Shown: one piece after another, positions 10,037 to 59,307 of the stretch | Layout of the letters: the number at the start of each line of letters is the position of its first letter | Position numbering within the stretch: position 1 is the stretch's first letter | IMG/VR virus record: IMGVR_UViG_3300037264_008423 | Coordinates: 62,001 to 126,000 of that record | Length of the DNA stretch: 64,000 nt | Direction: 5' to 3' (one strand) | The notes under the pieces: generated by a model | The model's database searches: none | The model's input: only the letters and a program-made list of their open reading frames with translations | What the model was told of the DNA's origin: nothing | Made by a program: the position numbers and the translations under genes

Positions 10037-10221
10037 ACCCTGTCGGAGCGTTGTTTTGCGCCGAAACCAGACCCCGTGAGTCGGCATTTGCACTCTGCCG
10101 TGGCGTCTGGAGCGAGGCGGAAAGTGAAGTGGTTCGGGTCCAAAGTTTGTGCAGGCTATGCGAGTATGGACACCGGATACGTCCGCTGGTTCGGTTTACC
10201 CGCGCCCTGCCCCGACAGGGT
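10037..10221 (+). ncRNA. Putative structured RNA containing a delocalised CRISPR-repeat copy
   Basis: Bracketed by a 10-bp inverted repeat ACCCTGTCGG (10037-10046) / CCGACAGGGT (10212-10221), with internal stems. 10142-10164 AAAGTTTGTGCAGGCTATGCGAG matches the 3' 23 nt of the array repeat at 21/23. Confidence 0.6.
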
Positions 10222-10235
10222 TTTGTATTTACGGT

Positions 10236-13200
10236 GTGCAGTTGGAGAATTTAGACGATGACGTGAGCGTGAAGGATCTGGCGGACTATCCGCGCTACCT
10301 GATCCGCAACCCTCAAGGCGACTACTGGTCCAATGACTGGGGATGGGTGGACTACGCCAGCGCCGACATTTTCAGTCACCTGGAAAAAGAGCGGTTCGAC
10401 CTGCCTTCGGAGGGTCAATGGGTTCCCCTGGCCGAATCCCGTCCGGTTATTGGTTTCCCCGGCAATGACTTGAAGGCGCTCCTGGGAGAGGATTTTGTAA
10501 ACAAAGCGGACGCCTTCCTTCAGGAGCAGGGTATGCTGTGCCTCCTGGAGTGGCACCCGCAGGGCCGTCGGGTGGGCCAGGCCCAGGCGGCGGGTCAGGC
10601 GCTCACGGCGCGCTTGAGCCTGAACAGCGCCGACAGCCAGCTCTTGCGCCGCGAGGGGAGCCTGAAGCTTTTAGATCAGTTGCGGGAGAGCGTGCGCGGG
10701 TTTCTGCCCAAGAGCGCCGAGAGCCGGGTCCGGGTGGTTCCCCAGCGTCCCCAGTATGACCGCTGGAACGACCGCTGGAACCTGGAGCTGGTGGTCTTGG
10801 AGGCGTCCGAGGACGACTTGGAGTCCAAAGAGGTCTATTTTGACGATGATCCACCTGAATTTGCCGCTCCCCAGGGCCTTAGCCCGGAGGGAGAGCGCGC
10901 CCGGCAGATCATTGTCCAGGTGCTTCGGCGCAATGGCGATCTGGATTCACGCGGTCAAAAGCATGTTTTCTATACCCCCGAACAATGGGCGCTAAAGGCG
11001 GATGAGCATGTTAAGGACGGGGTATTAGTGGTCGTTCACGATGGCGGCAGCCACGCTCCTTACTTTCACATGTCCTACGCGGCTGAATTAATGCTGAGCC
11101 GGATGGACCTGGCCCTGCGCCGGGAGGGATTTCAAATTTACCCCTACGCCCCTCATTACTCGGTGATTGCTCCGGTGGAACATGACGAGGCTAACCAGTG
11201 GTTTGTGCGCCAGATCGAGGATTGGTTCCAGCGAAACCCGGACCCGGCTGCGGTGCCCGGCGAGGAGCCGCCGCCCCCGGCAGCCACAGGGAATGTCCCG
11301 GAGAGCTTGGAGGACGATGACGATGTAAACTGGAAGGACCTGCAACTGCCGCTGGACAAAGAGGCGGCGATCCGGCACGTGTTTCGGCAGGCGGGGCTGA
11401 AGATCACGTCGATTCAGGAAGTGCCTGAAGACCAGGACTGGGGTGAGCTGGGGCACGCCCAGCGCATCATCGTCACCCGTGTTCCGCCCAATCCCGATCA
11501 GCCCTGGACTACGGACATAAACGCGTGGGAGGCAGTCGATGAGTTTTGTTTACGAATCAAGTCGGCCCTCTATGAGATCCTGGACACGGATGACATCGAG
11601 TGGCTGAGAAACTGGGGCCTGGAGGACCAAGCGCCGGAGGGCCGCCATTGGTATATCTGGTGGTATATCGGCGACCCGGACATCAAGGAAGAGCGGGAAA
11701 TGAATGAATCGGACGAGGACGACTTCGACGTGAAGGACTACTCGGACGACATCCCGCAATCGGATGACTTCCAGGCTTACCTGCTTCAGCGCGGATTTCG
11801 CAAGCTTTCGGGTCAGATGGGAGACTACTTCAAGAAGCTGCCTGCTGCTTACGCGCGGGTTCGGGTTTATCAGTATCCCAACTATGTCAGCTACCTGCTG
11901 GGCCTGAAGGAGGGCAACCACTGGTTTAAGTTGAGCGAGATGACCAACGCCTACCGGGTCCTGTCGGTTTTGCAGCAGCGAGGGCTGTTCGACGTGCGGG
12001 AGGGCCTGGACGAGGAGTTTGGAGCCGATGACGACCCGGAGCTGTATCTCACGCCCACGCCGAACCTTCAGGAGCGGTGGAATCAGTTCGAGGCGGCCTG
12101 GCGCAGTCAGTGGGCGCTCATACAGCGCGGGGTTAATTTCGGCCAGCGCACCGCTTACCTGGAGGGGATCATGCCCTCGCACCTGCGATGGCGCGCCGCG
12201 TTCCAAGAGGTTCAACGGCTCGTTTACGAGCACTTGGGGGGCGGACGCATCGCCGATTTCAAGTATCACCGGGATGGCTACGTCCTGTTTCACATCTACG
12301 ACCTGGGCGGCGTGGTGGAGAGCGAGGCGGAGAGTGAGGCGGATGATGTGGACTGGAAGGAGATCTCTTCCTATCCCAAGCCCAGCGCGCGGGAGGTCCG
12401 GGAAGCCATGAAGCGCCGGGGGATCGTCTATAATCGCCTGGTGCGCGGCAAGGATGTGGTGACCTTCCTGGGCTGGTTTAAGCGGGGTCAACTCGAACTG
12501 GATGTGCTGGCCCTGTTGCGGGAAGCGGCGGCGGAAGCGGGTCTTGACCAGGAGCACGTCCAGTTTTTCTATATGCCCGGCGCGGGTGAGGTCGCGATCA
12601 TCGCGGCGCGGACGGGCCTGTTGGAAAGCGAGGAGGATGAGGACTTTGACACTAGAACCTTGAAGGATGTGTCTGAAACTGGCAAGTTAGTGCCGGAAAT
12701 TGTGGCGGCGATGATCAAAAATGGGGTCATCCATATGATGGTTCGCAGGCCGTGGCAGCCCCCGCCCCACGACTTGCTGCTTTTTATGGGCTTGTGGCAG
12801 GCAGGCAAGACGGACCAGGAGGCCGCCCAGGTTTGCGCGGCGATCCTAAGAGATTTGCGCATTCCCATTACTTCCAGCTTGGACGACTGGTTCAACTATA
12901 TGCCCGGCTCCGGCGATTTCGACCTGGCGCTGCCTGCTTACCTGGTCTTGGACTGGGAGAGGTATGTGGTGGAATCCCAGGCTGGCCTGGTCCAAAAGAT
13001 CATCGAGGCCCAAGGCACGGTTCTAAACGTGCAAGTGGCAGACCGAGAGGAACTTGTCACGATTCAAGGCGAATGGAAGCCCGGAGCCACGGTTCAAGCT
13101 CTTGCCGAGGCCATTAGCGTGGATGCCAATCGGATTCAGTATGACGCCAAAAATGGCGAATTTACGGTGCTGGCAACCCGGCAAGCCCTTGTGCAAGAGG

Positions 13201-14765
13201 ATCAGGCGGATGGCAAGGCCAGCGACACCAAACGGGTCGCCATTGTGGCGGTGTTTCGGCAGAAGCAGGACGATCCCGCCTACGAGTGCCTGGTCTGCAA
13301 GCGCGAGGGGCCGCCAGCGGAGGGCGAATGGGTGATCCCAGGTGGTCATGCCGAGGAGGGCGAGGAGATCAAAGTCGCCGCGCGGCGTGAGTTGCAGGAA
13401 GAGGCGCACGTGGACCTGGGCGACCTGACCTTTGTTAAGACCATGCCCAATGAGACGGGGGACTTGGAAGTCCATGTCTTTGGAGCGATCTTGCCGGAAG
13501 GGGAGAGGGCCAAGGCCGGGGATGACGCGGAAAAGGTGAAATGGCTGCCCCTGGACGATCTGCCCAAGCTGAGCCTGGATAATGACAATTTGATCCGGGA
13601 AGTGGCCGAGGCGATGGAACTGCAACGGCTGCCCTCGGTGGACGAGAGCCTGCCCCCGCGCCTGGCCGACCAGATTCGGTCAAAGATAGCGGCCCTGAAG
13701 CCGCGCCGCGCGAGCCGCGCCGGTATGAGCTTCGAGGTTCAACAGCCAGAGGGATTTGTGGATCGGCTCATCGAGGGGATTGAGCGGGAAGCGGAGCAGT
13801 TGCAAGCCGACGCTCAGCCCGAACTGCGTCTCATGGACCTGATCGAGGATGCCTACAGCCAGACGGGCACCTATTTGTTTCCAGACGACCAGCAGGACGT
13901 GGAGCGATTGGCGCGCGTGCTGGTTCCTTTATTCAAAAAACCAGCCGGACGGCGGATCAAGGAGAGCGCGGACGCTCCCCCGCGCTATGGCACCGTTACC
14001 GACGAGGTAGTGCCTGCCCTGGAACAAGCTCTGGTGGAGATCTTTGGCCAGCGTTATGACTGGCTGGTGCCCCACGTGATCCAGCACATGGACCCGGAGA
14101 TCTCTTTGATCGCGATGGAGGGTGATCGCGTGATCGGTTTCTACATCCTGGGCCGCCGTTCGATCTTGGACGGCGTTAAGAGCGAGCACCTGAAGCCCAC
14201 TGAGGATTTGAAGCCCTATCGGCAGCGCCAGGGCATTGAGGGGGTAGCCCTGGGCATTGTGCCGGATCGCCGGGGCACGGGCCTGGGCAGCCGGTTCAAA
14301 GACTATCCACAAACCCTGGGCGCGGATTATATGTGGGGTCTGCAAATGCATGATCTGGATAACCTGAGCCACTGGCTCAAGCGCCGCCGCATTGTGGCGC
14401 GCAACCCGGAGATGGTCGCGACCCTCCAGGACTTTAAACCGGGGGCGGTAGCGGAGGCCAGCGAAGAGGATTTCGAGGCCAAGGACTTGGAAGATGATTT
14501 GCTGAATGACGAGCATTTTCAAAAGTTTGCCCAGGAGCACGGCCTACTCTACCACCCTGGCGCTAAAATGGTGCGCGACGTGCTGGATAATGTTTATGGT
14601 TCCATTTGGTTTAAGACCGGCCCCTATTTAAATCGGGAGGCCACGGTCCGCCAGTGGACCCAGGTGTTTTCCGACTATTTCAAGATCGATCCCGCCCGGA
14701 TGAAAGTGGCCTATTACCCGCCCAGTGGCGACATTATGGTCATGGTCACGAATCTGGTTCTGTAG
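10236..14765 (+). CDS. Modular polyprotein-like protein with 7 acidic tag linkers; cargo includes Nudix and GNAT domains
   Basis: Likely start GTG 10236 (TATTTA-N4-GTG). Nudix box GGHAEEGEEIKVAARRELQEEAHV at about 13341. GNAT motif A VALGIVPDRRGTGLG at about 14245. Recurring E(S/A)-acidic-KD tags. Confidence 0.75.
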   Translation: MQLENLDDDVSVKDLADYPRYLIRNPQGDYWSNDWGWVDYASADIFSHLEKERFDLPSEGQWVPLAESRPVIGFPGNDLKALLGEDFVNKADAFLQEQGMLCLLEWHPQGRRVGQAQAAGQALTARLSLNSADSQLLRREGSLKLLDQLRESVRGFLPKSAESRVRVVPQRPQYDRWNDRWNLELVVLEASEDDLESKEVYFDDDPPEFAAPQGLSPEGERARQIIVQVLRRNGDLDSRGQKHVFYTPEQWALKADEHVKDGVLVVVHDGGSHAPYFHMSYAAELMLSRMDLALRREGFQIYPYAPHYSVIAPVEHDEANQWFVRQIEDWFQRNPDPAAVPGEEPPPPAATGNVPESLEDDDDVNWKDLQLPLDKEAAIRHVFRQAGLKITSIQEVPEDQDWGELGHAQRIIVTRVPPNPDQPWTTDINAWEAVDEFCLRIKSALYEILDTDDIEWLRNWGLEDQAPEGRHWYIWWYIGDPDIKEEREMNESDEDDFDVKDYSDDIPQSDDFQAYLLQRGFRKLSGQMGDYFKKLPAAYARVRVYQYPNYVSYLLGLKEGNHWFKLSEMTNAYRVLSVLQQRGLFDVREGLDEEFGADDDPELYLTPTPNLQERWNQFEAAWRSQWALIQRGVNFGQRTAYLEGIMPSHLRWRAAFQEVQRLVYEHLGGGRIADFKYHRDGYVLFHIYDLGGVVESEAESEADDVDWKEISSYPKPSAREVREAMKRRGIVYNRLVRGKDVVTFLGWFKRGQLELDVLALLREAAAEAGLDQEHVQFFYMPGAGEVAIIAARTGLLESEEDEDFDTRTLKDVSETGKLVPEIVAAMIKNGVIHMMVRRPWQPPPHDLLLFMGLWQAGKTDQEAAQVCAAILRDLRIPITSSLDDWFNYMPGSGDFDLALPAYLVLDWERYVVESQAGLVQKIIEAQGTVLNVQVADREELVTIQGEWKPGATVQALAEAISVDANRIQYDAKNGEFTVLATRQALVQEDQADGKASDTKRVAIVAVFRQKQDDPAYECLVCKREGPPAEGEWVIPGGHAEEGEEIKVAARRELQEEAHVDLGDLTFVKTMPNETGDLEVHVFGAILPEGERAKAGDDAEKVKWLPLDDLPKLSLDNDNLIREVAEAMELQRLPSVDESLPPRLADQIRSKIAALKPRRASRAGMSFEVQQPEGFVDRLIEGIEREAEQLQADAQPELRLMDLIEDAYSQTGTYLFPDDQQDVERLARVLVPLFKKPAGRRIKESADAPPRYGTVTDEVVPALEQALVEIFGQRYDWLVPHVIQHMDPEISLIAMEGDRVIGFYILGRRSILDGVKSEHLKPTEDLKPYRQRQGIEGVALGIVPDRRGTGLGSRFKDYPQTLGADYMWGLQMHDLDNLSHWLKRRRIVARNPEMVATLQDFKPGAVAEASEEDFEAKDLEDDLLNDEHFQKFAQEHGLLYHPGAKMVRDVLDNVYGSIWFKTGPYLNREATVRQWTQVFSDYFKIDPARMKVAYYPPSGDIMVMVTNLVL

Positions 14766-15293: not shown

Positions 15294-16985
15294 ATGAATA
15301 CGGAAAGACAAGATCAGCCCTCTGTGAATCCCGCTCCGGCCAGCGTAGATGAAGCGCAAAGAGCCAAGCAGGAAGCCATCGCCCAGGCCAAAGCCAAAGC
15401 CCAGCGGAAGCAGGAGGAGAAAGAGGCAAAAGGTTTGCCCCGCTCGATTAAGCTTAAGCCCAAGCGCGTGCTGGAGTGGGAATGGGGTCCCTACCTGTAT
15501 AAGCAGCTTCGGGTGTGGGAGGCGACGACTTTTATGCGCCGCGAAATCTACCGTGGCCTTTTCAACGCGGACACTCCTCCCTATAAGACGGGGCACGACC
15601 GGTTGCAGCCTCACACCCAGGTATTCGGAGCCATCACCACTTACGCGAATCGGCTTTTAAAAGATTTTTCCGCTAAAGTCCAAATCCTGCCTGCCTACAT
15701 TACGGGGTTCATGACCAAAATTTATGCCGAAGACTATGCCGCTCGACGGGAACACATTTTGGTGACGGGCCTGGACTTTATTCCGATAGGCGGCTTTCCC
15801 GCGCAAGTGGAGATTCGGGCGGAGAACGTGGAGATTTTAGTTAACCCCGAAGATCCTCGTGGTTTTCTGATCCGGGTGCCTTTTTACCGCCACGATGTGC
15901 CGACCAAAAACGGCGGAACGAAATCAGAGGTCGTTTACGTGACCTACGTGATTGATCCCAAGGGGGACTGGCAGACGGGCAGCAGCCTTAAAAAACAGCA
16001 CCGCGCCAGCGCGTTTGACGGCACGCCTTTGCTGGAAAGACTGCGGACCGGCGAGCGCACGATGGGATCGTTGAAAATTTTGGGCAAGTTCCGATACGCT
16101 TCCTCCAGCGAGGCGAGGCTATTGCGGGAACAGGAGGACCGGGTGAGGGAAGCCAAAAAGAAAAACGATCCCTCGGTTGTAAAAATACCCTGGGAAATCA
16201 CTGATCCTTTCACGGTGGATGGCGTATTGCTGCCGCCCTATAAGCGCGACAAGTATAAGCGGCGCGTGGTTTACGAGCCGGTCCTGCAACTGTCTTACTA
16301 TCTGCCGCCGCTGCCCCCGGAGCGGGAACGGCGCGGCTTGGCCTTCTGCTACACCGATCCAGATCGGTTTATGGCGATCAAGATCCATCAAAATTTTGAG
16401 CGGGACCTGGACGACGAGCTGGTCCGTAGATCCTTGTTTATGTCGCAGAAGATCTATGAGCGCCACAAGCTGCTGGACCCCCACAACAAGATGTCGGTCA
16501 TGTCCCCGGAGCAAATCCGTGAGCTAGTTGAGCTTTCGGATCGGCGCTACACCGGTATTCGCCGAATGACGCGCTTGTTTGGGACGGGAGGCAACTCTAA
16601 AATGAAGGGCGTGAGCCAGAAAATCAAGGGGATTACCCTCCATTTTGACCATTCGGTAGTGAAAGCTTTCATGAACTTGGTCATCGAGCGCAACGCCGCC
16701 GAGTTTTACTATTTTGACGCGGACCGGCGCTACATGGAGCACTATCACTGGTTCATTCTCAGGGACTATTTTGCGCAGGCGTGCAAGGTGCTCCAGATCA
16801 AGTTCCATTACCTGGAGGGCTGGCAATTTAGCGATTGCCAGGCGGAGGAGAAAAAAGGCGGTAACTGGGACTTTAATAAGATTTACTTGCGGATACGCGG
16901 CGAAAAATCGAGGCGGACTCGTGCCGAGCACGAAAAATACAGTCAGGAACAGTATGAAAGGAGCTTAGCAGATGAAAAACCTTAG
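15294..16985 (+). CDS. TnpB/Cas12-like (type V-like) CRISPR effector, RuvC apparently inactivated
   Basis: 563 aa from ATG 15294, about 0.85 kb from the array. Segment order parallels TnpB/Cas12: N-terminal RSIKLKP strand; last WED strand VLQLSYYLP; RuvC-I-like strand RRGLAFCYTD (GID position reads AFC); basic bridge helix; FDHSVVKAFMNLVIERNAAEFYYFD (RuvC-II region); YHWFILRDYFAQACKVLQIKFHYLEG. No CxxC finger or RuvC-III. Confidence 0.7.
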   Translation: MNTERQDQPSVNPAPASVDEAQRAKQEAIAQAKAKAQRKQEEKEAKGLPRSIKLKPKRVLEWEWGPYLYKQLRVWEATTFMRREIYRGLFNADTPPYKTGHDRLQPHTQVFGAITTYANRLLKDFSAKVQILPAYITGFMTKIYAEDYAARREHILVTGLDFIPIGGFPAQVEIRAENVEILVNPEDPRGFLIRVPFYRHDVPTKNGGTKSEVVYVTYVIDPKGDWQTGSSLKKQHRASAFDGTPLLERLRTGERTMGSLKILGKFRYASSSEARLLREQEDRVREAKKKNDPSVVKIPWEITDPFTVDGVLLPPYKRDKYKRRVVYEPVLQLSYYLPPLPPERERRGLAFCYTDPDRFMAIKIHQNFERDLDDELVRRSLFMSQKIYERHKLLDPHNKMSVMSPEQIRELVELSDRRYTGIRRMTRLFGTGGNSKMKGVSQKIKGITLHFDHSVVKAFMNLVIERNAAEFYYFDADRRYMEHYHWFILRDYFAQACKVLQIKFHYLEGWQFSDCQAEEKKGGNWDFNKIYLRIRGEKSRRTRAEHEKYSQEQYERSLADEKP

Positions 16986-17655
16986 CAACAACAGCCAAGC
17001 GGTGGACCAGAACCTCGACCATCAGCTTGAGGCGCTATTCAAGAGCCAGTCGGCAAGCACGGAGAAAATTGCCTGGGTGATGATGGAAATGGTGGAGCGC
17101 CTGGATGGGGGATGGGTCCCGCGCAATGTCGCGGCGGTTACGGACCATATCCAGACCAAATATCGGCTCAGCAAGTTCATGATTGAAGGTTATTTTCGCG
17201 TGGCGAGAAAACTAACCTTGGTGGGGGTTTTTAGCGAGAAAAACGCCGCCGCCAGGGTGGTGCAGTTCTTCAGTATTGACGCCCAGCAGCAGGCGTTGGG
17301 CGGTATCCCTGTTTACCAGGGACCCGGTAAGAAAGCCAAGATCGAGAAGCTGCACCAGATTGAGGACCGGGAGGTCCCGATGATTTTTGACGAGCGCCTG
17401 CGCAAAATCCGTTCTGTGGAGGAGCAGGCGGCTTACACGGCGCTCGCCATGCGCCAGGTTGGACCGGTCAGCAAGTGCGCTGTGCGGTTTTGGCCTAATG
17501 GTGTGTATAAGCTGATTAAGAAAGCGAGCCGCGTGGATCAAGCTTACTGCTCTGACGCGCTGAAGAGACGGGGAGTGGAGTCCGTTCCTGATTACGCGCT
17601 AAGGGCGCAGATTGACCGGGACATCGAAAAAGAATTTGGCTCTGAAAAGGGCTGA
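16972..17655 (+). CDS. Hypothetical protein translationally coupled to the effector
   Basis: 227 aa, overlaps the effector stop by 14 bp, and is the last gene before the array. Confidence 0.75.
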   Translation: MKNLSNNSQAVDQNLDHQLEALFKSQSASTEKIAWVMMEMVERLDGGWVPRNVAAVTDHIQTKYRLSKFMIEGYFRVARKLTLVGVFSEKNAAARVVQFFSIDAQQQALGGIPVYQGPGKKAKIEKLHQIEDREVPMIFDERLRKIRSVEEQAAYTALAMRQVGPVSKCAVRFWPNGVYKLIKKASRVDQAYCSDALKRRGVESVPDYALRAQIDRDIEKEFGSEKG

Positions 17656-17657
17656 AA

Positions 17658-17834
17658 AATACACCGTATCGCAGCGGTGTTTAGCCAGGGGATCTGCGCC
17701 TGCGCCGATTCCTTGGGGAAGTCCTCCACACTGCGAGCGCCGTCGATTTTCGGCTTAACTTTAAGTTGGCCGTGCGGCGGCGCTCGCAAACTTGCTCTTT
17801 GACAATTGATGCTGAGTGACTTGCGGGGTGCGGG
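17658..17834 (+). ncRNA. Putative tracrRNA/scoutRNA-like structured leader region
   Basis: Hairpins 17661-17680, 17685-17716 and 17732-17788 (14-bp outer stem). CCTCCACA at 17723-17730 is complementary to repeat nt 20-27. Confidence 0.5.
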
Positions 17835-18405
17835 GTAGCACTGCTTAAAAGCTTGTGGAGGCTATGCGAGTCCACCTTTACTATATAGCTGACGGGTGAA
17901 AAGCGGGTATCACCGCTCAAAAGCTTGTGGAGGCTATGCGAGGCTGAGCTGGATAGGCACTCGGAAGCGGTCGTGCAAGTAGCACCGTTAAAAGCTTGTG
18001 GAGGCTATGCGAGCGCAGCTACCCCTAAGACCTTTTCCACCGGCGTTCTGTATCACTGCTTAAAAGCTTGTGGAGGCTATGCGAGATGACCATTGCGCCC
18101 ATGATGTGGCGCTGCGACTGGTATCACCGCTTAAAAGTCTGTGGAGGGCTATGCGAGAAGGTGGCTTACGGATACGCTGCTTAAAAGCCTGTGGAGGGCT
18201 GTGCGAGATGAGTGTCCCGAAAGCATTGAAGTATCACTGCTTAAAGGTTTGTGGAGGGCTATGCGAGAATAAAGTTTAGGAACGACGTGAAATTACTGAG
18301 GTATCACTGCTTTAAAGCTTGTGGAGGCTATGCGAGGATGATCTGGTCGTAACCATACGGCGCTTTGTAGTATCACTGCTTAAAAGCCTGTGGAGACTAT
18401 GCGAG
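17835..18405 (+). CRISPR. CRISPR array, 9 repeats / 8 spacers, consensus GTATCACTGCTTAAAAGCTTGTGGAGGCTATGCGAG (36 bp)
   Basis: Repeats start at 17835, 17907, 17979, 18050, 18121, ~18171, 18231, 18301 and 18370. Spacers are 36, 36, 36, 35, ~13, 23, 33 and 33 nt. Orientation inferred, not proven. Confidence 0.95.
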
Positions 18406-18430
18406 CACGTGGACAGTTCAGAGCAAAAAG

Positions 18431-18453
18431 CGCAATCTCCACAAGCTTTTAAG
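18431..18453. repeat. Anti-repeat (inverted copy of the CRISPR repeat core)
   Basis: CTCCACAAGCTTTTAAG (18437-18453) is the exact reverse complement of repeat nt 10-26. Pairing extends with bulges to CGCA at 18431. Confidence 0.85.
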
Positions 18454-18476
18454 TGTTAAAAATAGTTCTACCGGAC

Positions 18477-18893
18477 ATGGAACAGCTCATTGCCCATTTA
18501 GTCGGAGATTACGTGCTACAGAGCCAGTGGATGGCCAATAACAAAGACCGGGAGAACCTGCCCTGCCTGCTGCACTGCCTGCTCTACACGGCCTGCTTCC
18601 TGGCGCTTACCGGGTCCTGGAAGGCCCTGCTGGTGATCGGCGTGACCCACTTCCTGATCGACCGCTTCCGGCTGGTCCGTTACCTGATATGGGCTAAAAA
18701 CTGGCTGACGCCCCTGGGCTACTACCCGTGGAGCGCCTGCCAGAGCACCGGCTACCTGGATGTGGAACAGGACCCCATCGGGCTTAAGGAACCGTGGGAC
18801 CAGCGGCCCATCTGGCTGCGCGTGTGGCTCTTGATTATCACTGACAACACCCTGCACCTGGCTCTCAACTACGCGGCCCTCAAATATTTGTGA
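18477..18893 (+). CDS. DUF3307-family membrane protein
   Basis: LIAHLVGDYVLQSQWMA...K, LLHCLLY, THFLIDRF and DNTLH motifs. Confidence 0.8.
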   Translation: MEQLIAHLVGDYVLQSQWMANNKDRENLPCLLHCLLYTACFLALTGSWKALLVIGVTHFLIDRFRLVRYLIWAKNWLTPLGYYPWSACQSTGYLDVEQDPIGLKEPWDQRPIWLRVWLLIITDNTLHLALNYAALKYL

Positions 18894-18989
18894 AATACTT
18901 CCTGCTCGCCCTGTTCTCCCTGGCGGCCACGACTTTCAGCCTGGCCTGGGACTTATGGCGTCAACACCGTAAAGAAAGGAAAGGAACCC

Positions 18990-19199
18990 ATGACAGTCAA
19001 AGCGAAAAGTCTGACCAAAAACCCCGCGCCTAAAGCGCGCGAAGTGGATTACGTCTGCCCCCATACCGGCCACACGGTCTATGTGGCCCACGGGCACATC
19101 ACGATCCAGGCCCACGGGCACACCACCCGGCTCTCTATCGCGCAATGGGCCAAGCTGGGTCGCATCGCTCTTCAGGTCGGGGAGTTTTTTGACCTATAG
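18990..19199 (+). CDS. Hypothetical protein
   Basis: 69-aa ORF preceded by GGAAAGGA. Confidence 0.55.
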   Translation: MTVKAKSLTKNPAPKAREVDYVCPHTGHTVYVAHGHITIQAHGHTTRLSIAQWAKLGRIALQVGEFFDL

Positions 19200-58923: not shown

Positions 58924-59307
58924 ATGAAAGCGACTTTGGCTATTCTTAAGCACCTTTTAGAGGACGACGAAGAAGATTTTGACCTGAAAGACCTGGCGGA
59001 CACCCCGCCGTGCCCTGTGTTTGCGCTCGTCGATGGACTTACCGGCTTTGCTGACCCCATCGGCAGCGCCATTTACCGCAATTGGAAGATTTATTACGAC
59101 AGCCGTCCCAATGATGCTTACGAAATCGACTGGATTCGCTACAACCACACCCCCAATAAGACCTACAGTCGGCGGAGCCAGCGCCGGTTTGAGCAGGCGG
59201 TCCTGGACCGGGGCGGGGGAGGCCGCCTTGAAATCAAAGTGCTGGACGGCACCCTGGGGCCGCACCGGTGGAGTGTGCGCGTGCAGAGTTCCGGTTCTTG
59301 CGCGTGA
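58924..59307 (+). CDS. Small protein with an N-terminal acidic tag
   Basis: ILKHLLEDDEEDFDLKDL. Confidence 0.65.
   Translation: MKATLAILKHLLEDDEEDFDLKDLADTPPCPVFALVDGLTGFADPIGSAIYRNWKIYYDSRPNDAYEIDWIRYNHTPNKTYSRRSQRRFEQAVLDRGGGGRLEIKVLDGTLGPHRWSVRVQSSGSCA

What the first reader, a model, noticed from the sequence alone, without database searches (positions are those of the whole stretch)
18370..18453. Anti-repeat just downstream of the last repeat, matched to that repeat's private variant
Seen: an exact 17-nt reverse complement of repeat nt 10-26 at 18437-18453 (chance about 7e-6 per 128 kb), 31 nt after the last repeat. The last repeat uniquely reads GGAGA instead of GGAGG, and the anti-repeat has the complementary T (18436), so the two can form a long hairpin. 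Inference: either a cis fold-back that processes or terminates the pre-crRNA, or the anti-repeat end of a second tracrRNA. It also bears on the true array orientation.
Basis: partly seen in the sequence, partly recalled or inferred. Interest (0 to 1): 0.7.

Follow-up and report, generated by a model that had tools for sequence, protein, structure and literature searches.

The report
Inverted repeat fragment after phage CRISPR array
A jumbo-phage CRISPR array ends with a real, non-random inverted copy of the repeat core that can fold back on the last repeat, but seven related loci lack it; they keep their guide-partner RNA upstream of the array, so this looks like a lineage-specific end-of-array hairpin rather than a second tracrRNA.

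Summary
Window 18437-18453 is an exact 17-nt reverse complement of the repeat core, and T18436 complements the A of the last repeat.

The "private match" is overstated:
- The last repeat's other variant (C18388) is mismatched.
- Repeats 1 and 4 pair better with the element than repeat 9 does.
- A solitary repeat elsewhere in the genome also reads GGAGA.

The array belongs to a rare phage module that I could not match to any named family:
- a 563-aa protein with a Cas12f fold and no Pfam or PADLOC hit;
- a conserved ~230-aa partner gene;
- a structured non-coding RNA;
- the array itself.

Seven related metagenomic lineages share this module. In six of the seven lineages compared (the window and five relatives), the upstream RNA carries a 6-8-nt anti-repeat that co-varies with the repeat core (1 of 5040 permutations does as well). 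That RNA is the conserved tracr-like partner. Family comparison sets the array orientation as +.

None of the three relatives whose array end is present (L011/L018, L016, L021) has the downstream anti-repeat. No RNA data, promoter or terminator supports a separate transcript.

Ranking:
- cis fold-back that sequesters the terminal repeat and marks the 3' end of the pre-crRNA: about 0.4;
- neutral inverted duplication: about 0.3;
- second trans-acting anti-repeat RNA: about 0.15.

The parts
15294..16985 (+). Gene for a 563-aa Cas12f/TnpB-fold protein (P0001), the presumed effector of the array
   Evidence: - No Pfam or PADLOC hit.
- AF2 model: pLDDT 70, pTM 0.60.
- Foldseek against PDB: top hits are all Cas12f, best E = 1e-15.
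- VIA Z-scores: 17-18.5 to Cas12f, 15 to dCas12f, 12 to Cas12k, 11.5 to TnpB.
- Only 7 distant homologues among 1.8 billion representatives.
16972..17655 (+). Conserved partner gene (227 aa, function unknown) that overlaps the end of the effector gene
   Evidence: A homologue sits directly downstream of every homologue of the effector (alignment A3). It has no Pfam hit, and the Atlas gives only weak leads.
17684..17790 (+). Conserved structured non-coding RNA (tracr-like leader). Stem 1 is 17685-17693 with 17708-17716. The linker holds an 8-nt anti-repeat, CCTCCACA, at 17723-17730. The long hairpin is 17732-17745 with 17775-17788.
   Evidence: - Alignment of 8 loci (A4).
- The RNAalifold consensus has 24 pairs, 12 of them with compensatory changes, and G-U pairs that work only on the + strand.
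- The linker anti-repeat co-varies with each locus's own repeat core; only 1 of 5040 permutations reaches the observed total.
17835..18405 (+). CRISPR array: nine 35-37-nt repeats and eight spacers of 13-36 nt. Repeats 5-7 carry a 1-nt insertion and flank short spacers.
   Evidence: No spacer matches the phage's own genome. The 238-kb genome has no Cas1 and no Cas9.
18370..18405 (+). Terminal repeat (repeat 9), with variants C18388 and A18396
   Evidence: Its pairing with the upstream anti-repeat is the weakest of all nine repeats, -18.4 against -21.3 to -24.9 kcal/mol.
18406..18430 (+). Trailer segment that forms the loop of the fold-back. It would be the guide of a spurious crRNA made from the terminal repeat.
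   Evidence: structure. The role as a spurious guide is inferred from the repeat-then-guide configuration.
18431..18454 (+). The downstream anti-repeat, an inverted partial repeat copy. It covers repeat nt 10-34 with two 1-nt gaps; the core 18436-18453 is 17 of 18 complementary to repeat 9 and 17 of 17 to repeats 1 and 4.
18477..18893 (+). Next gene, a DUF3307 protein. Its likely start is ATG 18477, 23 nt after the anti-repeat.
   Evidence: The Pfam PF11750 match begins at profile position 4, at the residue after that Met. ORF list.
10131..10164 (+). Solitary repeat-like unit (3' two-thirds of a repeat) that ends 1 nt before ATG 10166 of the giant NUDIX-domain ORF

Best explanation
The element is a lineage-specific, cis-acting trailer anti-repeat.

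Shown or supported by comparison:
- The array is read on the + strand, like all its neighbours, and in the type V repeat-then-guide configuration.
- In that configuration the last repeat has no spacer behind it.

Inferred:
- When RNA polymerase passes 18431-18454, the new RNA folds back on the nearest free repeat core, which is repeat 9. This gives a 22-bp interrupted duplex with a ~27-nt loop made of the would-be guide.
- The duplex hides the same repeat segment (TGTGGAG...) that the conserved upstream tracr-like RNA must pair with.
- The spare repeat therefore cannot be loaded into the Cas12f-like protein as a useless 'extraneous' crRNA.
- The long duplex also gives the pre-crRNA a protected 3' boundary that RNase III could cut, ahead of the DUF3307 mRNA.
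For: - The complementarity is exact and non-random.
- The hairpin is predicted at -33.3 kcal/mol, z = -2.8.
- The element is on the same strand as the array, and no terminator-like site lies between repeat 9 and the element.
- The + orientation and repeat-then-guide logic rest on three points:
  - the effector has a Cas12f fold;
  - in all relatives the 3' part of the repeat is conserved and the 5' part is variable;
  - in L021 the ten perfect repeats lie next to the genes and the decayed ones at the far end.
- The element covers the segment bound by the conserved, co-varying upstream anti-repeat and binds it far more strongly, -30 to -35 against -18 to -25 kcal/mol.
- Decay is uneven. The 18-nt core is perfect, as good as the best array repeats, while the adjoining part has two indels and repeat nt 1-9 are unrecognisable. 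This fits selection on the pairing core.
- Repeat 9 is the weakest partner of the upstream anti-repeat.
- There is precedent. Flank-repeat hairpins block extraneous crRNAs in type II-A and VI-B systems, and most systems derive the extraneous crRNA from the last repeat (PMC13187072, PMC12080349).
Against: - No relative with a complete array end (L011/L018, L016, L021) has such an element, and none has a same-strand complement of its repeat of 11 nt or more anywhere in the locus.
- No RNA run could be listed, so transcription is unproven.
- The element is not specific for repeat 9. Repeats 1 and 4 pair better, and equilibrium folds choose repeat 1 or repeat 7. The model therefore needs kinetic, co-transcriptional folding.
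- The helix is better on the - strand, where the C-A mismatch becomes G-U: -37.7 kcal/mol, z = -4.2.
- The A/T 'compensation' could come from common descent or template-switch correction within a quasi-palindrome, without selection.
Confidence: 0.4

Rival explanations
1. The element is a neutral by-product. A partial repeat was duplicated in inverted orientation, by fold-back or template-switch replication or by recombination in a decaying array, and it has no selected role.
For: - It is absent from every relative.
- This array is visibly rearranged: repeats carry indels, and two spacers are 13 and 23 nt long.
- The genome has no Cas1.
- The 71 nt from the last repeat to the next start codon equal one repeat-spacer unit.
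- Descent from a GGAGA-type repeat explains the matching T without selection. Another GGAGA unit exists in the genome.
Against: - The 18-nt core is perfect while its flanks have decayed.
- The array's own repeats differ from the consensus at 0-2 positions in the same core segment.
- A recent duplication would not have two indels right next to a perfect core, and an old neutral one would not keep a perfect core.
Confidence: 0.3
2. The element belongs to a second, trans-acting anti-repeat RNA, on either strand. This would be a second tracrRNA, or a high-affinity competitor that pairs with all repeats and modulates crRNA maturation.
For: - It pairs with all nine repeats at -30 to -35 kcal/mol, more strongly than the conserved upstream anti-repeat does.
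- Cas12f-type effectors use tracrRNAs with a long repeat:anti-repeat duplex (established knowledge; fold match).
- The helix is more stable on the - strand.
Against: - All related loci already hold a conserved, structured, co-varying tracr-like RNA upstream of the array, and they function without any long anti-repeat.
- Only 23 nt separate the element from the DUF3307 start codon, and the last repeat lies 30 nt upstream, so there is no room for a scaffold.
- The region has no promoter-like site and no terminator-like site next to the element.
- Rfam has no match.
Confidence: 0.15
3. The element acts at the DNA level. Together with repeat 1 it forms exact 17-bp inverted repeats that bracket the whole array. 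These could be a protein-binding or recombination site, or a relic of the subterminal palindromes of the TnpB-type ancestor.
For: The exact inverted pair 17844-17860 / 18437-18453 flanks the array (pair I1). The effector is TnpB-related.
Against: Relatives show no such bracket. No recombinase is encoded nearby. Seventeen base pairs is short for homologous inversion.
Confidence: 0.05

Closest known systems
Leader-repeat hairpins that block extraneous crRNA (type II-A, Liao et al. 2022; type VI-B and others, PMC13187072). [quoted passage not shown] 2019, cited there).
   Same: Transcribed sequence flanking the array pairs with the one repeat that lacks a spacer. It competes with the structure or partner that the effector needs.
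   Different: - Here the hairpin is at the trailer and last repeat of a repeat-then-guide, tracr-type type V-like system. The known cases are at the leader and first repeat.
- It is not conserved among relatives, whereas the known hairpins are.
- It has no experimental support.
tracrRNA anti-repeats of type V-F (Cas12f), V-B, V-E and type II systems
   Same: A stretch complementary to the repeat lies next to the array of a Cas12f-fold effector.
   Different: It has no scaffold, no transcription signals of its own and no conservation. The family's conserved anti-repeat is a 6-8-nt segment inside a structured RNA upstream of the array.
Type V-F CRISPR-Cas (Cas12f/Cas14) and other miniature phage Cas12 families (Cas12p 'hacker', bioRxiv 10.1101/2025.01.20.633832; Cas-lambda)
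   Same: The effector is small and TnpB-like. It sits next to an array with a tracr-like RNA, it is phage-borne, and the locus has no adaptation genes.
   Different: - No sequence-level match to any Cas12 model.
- No TNB zinc-ribbon match.
- Only one clearly invariant RuvC-like acidic residue.
- It is always coupled to a ~230-aa partner gene.
- Structurally it is nearer to Cas12f (Z 18) than to Cas12p or Cas-lambda (Z about 10).
RNase III processing hairpins between genes of phage polycistronic transcripts (for example T7)
   Same: A long, nearly perfect duplex lies in an intergenic position within a same-strand gene block.
   Different: The T7 sites are not built from CRISPR repeats. RNase III cleavage here is only inferred.

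Membership tests
tracrRNA (trans-activating CRISPR RNA) | Anti-repeat complementary to the CRISPR repeat | tested here: met
   17 of 17 exact to repeats 1 and 4, and 17 of 18 to repeat 9. Duplex energies are -30 to -35 kcal/mol with all repeats.
tracrRNA (trans-activating CRISPR RNA) | A separate RNA with its own scaffold and transcription signals | tested here: not met
   No promoter-like or terminator-like site lies at the element. The last repeat lies 30 nt upstream and the DUF3307 start codon 23 nt downstream. Rfam has no match.
tracrRNA (trans-activating CRISPR RNA) | Conserved position and co-variation with the repeat across related loci | tested here: not met
   The element is absent after the arrays of L011/L018, L016 and L021, and no same-strand complement of 11 nt or more occurs in any related locus. 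The upstream RNA does meet this criterion.
tracrRNA (trans-activating CRISPR RNA) | Expressed, bound by the effector, and required for crRNA maturation or interference | not testable with these tools
   No RNA run could be listed.
Flank-repeat hairpin that suppresses extraneous crRNA | Predicted hairpin between transcribed flank and a repeat, more stable than chance | tested here: met
   -33.3 kcal/mol, z = -2.8, 2 of 200 shuffles as good.
Flank-repeat hairpin that suppresses extraneous crRNA | The paired repeat is the one lacking a spacer, given the crRNA configuration | tested here: inconclusive
   The + orientation and repeat-then-guide configuration are supported, so the last repeat is the spare one and the nearest. 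Equilibrium folds nevertheless prefer repeat 1 or repeat 7.
Flank-repeat hairpin that suppresses extraneous crRNA | Recurs across related systems | tested here: not met
Flank-repeat hairpin that suppresses extraneous crRNA | Blocks processing or loading of the spare repeat | not testable with these tools
   This needs RNA-seq or Northern blots of wild type against hairpin mutants.
Intrinsic (Rho-independent) terminator | G+C-rich stem with a short loop, followed by a U-run | tested here: not met
   The loop is about 27 nt, the stem is followed by GUGUUAAAAAUAG, and the scan did not call it.
Type V-F (Cas12f) CRISPR-Cas locus | Effector with a Cas12f/TnpB fold next to an array | tested here: met
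   fold; array.
Type V-F (Cas12f) CRISPR-Cas locus | Intact RuvC triad and TNB zinc ribbon | tested here: inconclusive
   - PF07282 has no match in the genome.
- Among six homologues only the HTDP aspartate (D355) is an invariant acidic residue in the RuvC region.
- A weak profile match to TnpB (E = 0.086) places a Tyr at the RuvC-II Glu, but this depends on the alignment.
Type V-F (Cas12f) CRISPR-Cas locus | tracrRNA that pairs with the repeat | tested here: met
   Met in silico only: a structured upstream RNA with compensatory pairs and a co-varying 6-8-nt anti-repeat.

The most novel reading that the evidence does not exclude
The downstream element is a high-affinity anti-repeat that this phage uses as a switch. 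By out-competing the short upstream tracr-like anti-repeat for the repeat core, in cis or in trans, it would tune or shut off maturation of the phage's own crRNAs. It would do so within an undescribed phage type V lineage: a Cas12f-fold protein that may be nuclease-inactive, an obligate ~230-aa partner, and a leader-embedded tracr-like RNA.
Probability: 0.12. Interest if true: 0.75.

Novelty: new variant of a known kind. Interest (0 to 1): 0.5.

Why it matters
If the fold-back is functional, it would be the mirror image of the leader-repeat hairpins known from type II-A and VI-B systems. It would show that repeat-then-guide type V arrays can silence their spare terminal repeat through RNA structure as well as through mutation.

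The surrounding locus matters more broadly. It is a rare phage-borne Cas12f-fold system with a conserved partner protein and a co-varying tracr-like RNA. It matches no current Cas model by sequence, it is small (460-560 aa), and its guide-RNA architecture can now be drawn from comparative data.

Tried and rejected
Searches that found nothing useful:
- Known cas genes. Pfam and PADLOC on neighbouring and large ORFs gave no hit. Whole-genome searches found no TNB domain, no Cas1, and for Cas9 only HNH-domain matches.
- Word-indexed protein searches returned only the protein itself.
- IMG/VR, four scans:
  - the repeat 20-mer found nothing;
  - the family protein profile found nothing;
  - the leader-hairpin pattern returned 120 GC-rich hits, none with an array or the GGGGA context;
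  - the 17-mer gave 4 single chance matches with no flanking similarity.
- The family profile found nothing in genome contigs.
- Rfam gave no relevant match.
- RNA evidence. One DNA run, probably the source sample, holds the region. No RNA run could be listed.
- Spacers have no match in the phage's own genome.

Ideas considered and set aside:
- Array on the - strand. In favour were a repeat 3' end like ...GTGATAC, a - strand terminator-like hairpin at 17680-17661 and a better - strand helix. I rejected it as the main reading because the family data point the other way: the 3' part of the repeat is conserved, L021 shows a decay gradient away from the genes, and the upstream RNA has G-U pairs that work only on the + strand.
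- A Cas9-type sgRNA-like reading of repeat-loop-anti-repeat. Rejected because the genome has no Cas9.
- Intrinsic terminator. Rejected because no U-run follows the stem.
- The conserved TTGACA-like box upstream of repeat 1 as a sigma-70 promoter. No -10 element lies at a proper spacing in any locus.

Full report
**1. The observation**

The window is bases 62001-126000 of a 238-kb IMG/VR virus record, CheckV 96% complete, so a jumbo phage. It probably comes from a sediment metagenome.

At 17835-18405 there are nine 35-37-nt repeats with eight spacers. The 17-mer at 18437-18453 is an exact reverse complement of repeat nt 10-26 as found in repeats 1 and 4. It is the only opposite-strand copy among 11 matches in the window, against 0.15 expected by chance.

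T18436 complements A18396 of the last repeat. The pairing resumes after a small internal loop, with 18400-18403 pairing 18431-18434. The result is a 22-bp interrupted helix with a loop of about 27 nt, at -33.3 kcal/mol and z = -2.8 on the + strand.

An alignment of the reverse-complemented trailer with repeat 9 covers repeat nt 10-34 with two 1-nt gaps. Nothing of repeat nt 1-9 remains.

A Logan contig built independently from the source run crosses 18056-18804 without a difference, so the junction does not depend on the IMG/VR assembly alone.

**2. Limits of the "private variant" argument**

- Repeat 9 has two variants. A18396 is complemented, but C18388 meets A18444 as a C-A mismatch.
- Duplex energies with the element are -35.4 kcal/mol for repeats 1 and 4, -32.1 for repeat 9, and -30 to -34 for the rest.
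- A partition-function fold of the whole array plus trailer pairs the element with repeat 1 (probability 0.985).
- A fold of repeats 7-9 plus trailer pairs it with repeat 7.
- Any preference for repeat 9 therefore has to come from proximity during transcription, not from sequence.
- GGAGA also occurs in a solitary repeat unit at genome position 59087-59122.

**3. What the array belongs to**

The ORF just upstream, 563 aa from 15294, has no Pfam or PADLOC hit. A language-model and structure look-up pointed to TnpB/Cas12f.

Exhaustive HMMER found seven distant homologues. An AF2 model built on six sequences reached pLDDT 70 and pTM 0.60. Its matches in the PDB:

| Match | Score |
|---|---|
| Cas12f (Foldseek) | E = 1e-15 |
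| Cas12f (VIA) | Z 17-18.5 |
| dCas12f | Z 15 |
| Cas12k | Z 12 |
| TnpB, Cas12m | Z 11.5 |
| Cas12p, Cas-lambda | Z about 10 |

The genome has no Cas1, no Cas9 and no TNB zinc-ribbon match. Only one RuvC-like acidic residue (D355, in the HTDP motif) is invariant in the family alignment. Nuclease activity is therefore uncertain.

**4. The family module**

Every homologue sits in the same arrangement:
- the effector gene;
- an overlapping or abutting ~210-237-aa gene (alignment A3);
- a non-coding stretch;
- an array of ~36-nt repeats, wherever the contig reaches that far (L014 ends before it and L015 at what looks like the first repeat). The 3' part of the repeats is conserved within and between loci (TTGTGG...TGCGGG-like). 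The 5' part varies even within one array.

In L021, on a 70-kb contig, the ten repeats next to the genes are identical and the distal ones are decayed.

Together with the Cas12f fold, this fixes the orientation as +. It also fixes the crRNA as repeat-handle followed by guide. The last repeat is therefore the one without a spacer.

**5. The conserved partner RNA lies upstream**

The stretch between the partner gene and the first repeat aligns across eight loci (A4). It folds into a consensus of a short stem and a long bipartite hairpin.
- The consensus has 24 pairs, 12 of them with compensatory changes.
- Several G-U pairs would be C-A mismatches on the other strand.

In the single-stranded linker between the stems, six of the seven lineages compared carry a 6-8-nt complement of their own repeat core:

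| Locus | Linker anti-repeat | Repeat core |
|---|---|---|
| Window | CCTCCACA | TGTGGAGG |
| L011 | CACCACC | GGTGGTG |
| L012 | TACCGCC | GGCGGTA |
| L013/L019/L021 | GACCACA | TGTGGTC |
| L015 | CACCAAC | GTTGGTG |
| L022 | TACCAC | GTGGTA |

The cognate assignment is the best of all 5040 permutations. This upstream RNA is the family's tracr-like RNA.

**6. The downstream element is not conserved**

No same-strand complement of the repeat of 11 nt or more occurs anywhere in L011, L012, L016, L019, L021 or L022. The sequences after the complete arrays of L011/L018, L016 and L021 show nothing comparable. The element is therefore specific to this phage lineage.

**7. Mechanism**

The element is on the same strand as the array. 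No terminator-like site lies between it and repeat 9, and no promoter-like site lies anywhere in 17400-19000. It covers the repeat segment that the upstream anti-repeat binds, and it binds that segment about 10 kcal/mol more strongly. Repeat 9 is also the weakest partner of the upstream anti-repeat, at -18.4 kcal/mol.

The 18-nt core is as intact as the best repeats, while its flanks are decayed. This argues for selection on pairing.

The most likely role is a cis fold-back with two effects:
- It keeps the spare terminal repeat from pairing with the tracr-like RNA and loading the effector. This is the trailer-side counterpart of the leader-repeat hairpins described for type II-A and VI-B systems (PMC13187072, PMC12080349).
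- It gives the pre-crRNA a double-stranded 3' boundary that RNase III could cut, ahead of the DUF3307 gene. That gene starts at 18477.

All of this is inference from sequence. No RNA data could be found.

**8. Rivals**

- **Neutral inverted duplication.** This is a serious alternative. The element has no conservation, the array is visibly rearranged with 13-nt and 23-nt spacers and repeat indels, and common descent explains the A/T match.
- **Second trans-acting anti-repeat RNA.** This is possible because the element pairs strongly with all repeats, and the helix is better on the - strand (-37.7 kcal/mol, z = -4.2). However, it lacks room for a scaffold, transcription signals and conservation.
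- **DNA-level role.** The 17-bp inverted pair that brackets the array could act as DNA, but nothing else supports this.
- **Intrinsic terminator.** This is excluded because no U-run follows the stem.

**9. Comparison and novelty**

The hairpin, if functional, is a new variant of a known kind of extraneous-crRNA control. The locus itself is a rare, apparently undescribed Cas12f-fold lineage of phages. It is nearer to Cas12f than to Cas12p in structure (Cas12p is described in bioRxiv 10.1101/2025.01.20.633832). No named family matched it by sequence.

**10. Verdict**

The claim of a private match is weakened.
The cis fold-back is plausible, and the second tracrRNA is unlikely.
- The orientation is resolved as +.
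- Interest is moderate for the element itself and higher for the surrounding system.

Noticed in passing
window 10131-10164; also G000:C1:59087-59122 (L007:1493-1528): Two solitary repeat-like units lie on the + strand outside the array.
- One ends 1 nt before ATG 10166, the likely start of the 1538-aa NUDIX-domain ORF.
- The other is a full 36-nt unit with the GGAGA variant. It lies between a 2H/2'-5' RNA-ligase-superfamily ORF and a 276-aa ORF.
- Relative L012 also has handle-like units just before a NUDIX gene.
These may be crRNA-like or effector-binding sites in 5' UTRs.
   Followed up: partly
window 15294-17655 and loci L011-L022: A Cas12f-fold protein is always paired with a ~230-aa protein of unknown function. 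The family has no TNB zinc-ribbon match and only one invariant RuvC-like acidic residue, so it may be a binding-only effector with an obligate partner.
   Followed up: partly
window 17795-17806 and the equivalent place in L012, L013, L015, L016, L019, L022: A conserved TTCTTTGACA-like box (TTGACA, TTGTCA, TTGGCA, TTGATA or TTGAAA) lies between the tracr-like hairpin and the first repeat. No matching -10 element was seen. It may be part of a degenerate 'repeat 0'.
   Followed up: partly
window 17661-17680: A hairpin lies just after the stop codon of the partner gene. The T-run is better on the - strand (ATTTTTC) than on the + strand. It could stop antisense transcription coming out of the array, or act in both directions.
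   Followed up: no
window 18121-18267: Repeats 5-7 share a 1-nt insertion (GGAGGG) and flank spacers of only 13 and 23 nt. This points to internal deletion or recombination within the array. The related arrays L011 and L016 also contain truncated units made only of the 3' handle.
   Followed up: partly
window 10149-14765: A giant 1538-aa ORF has a single recognisable NUDIX domain (residues 1029-1149) that also matches the PADLOC candidate PDC-S07. The rest of the protein is unannotated.
   Followed up: no
L016:6025-6034 and L021:3752-3761: Ten-nt exact complements of the local repeat core lie at the 5' end of the effector gene (L016) and 249 nt upstream of it (L021). Each is expected about 0.2-0.35 times by chance, so they are probably noise, but their positions are suggestive.
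   Followed up: no
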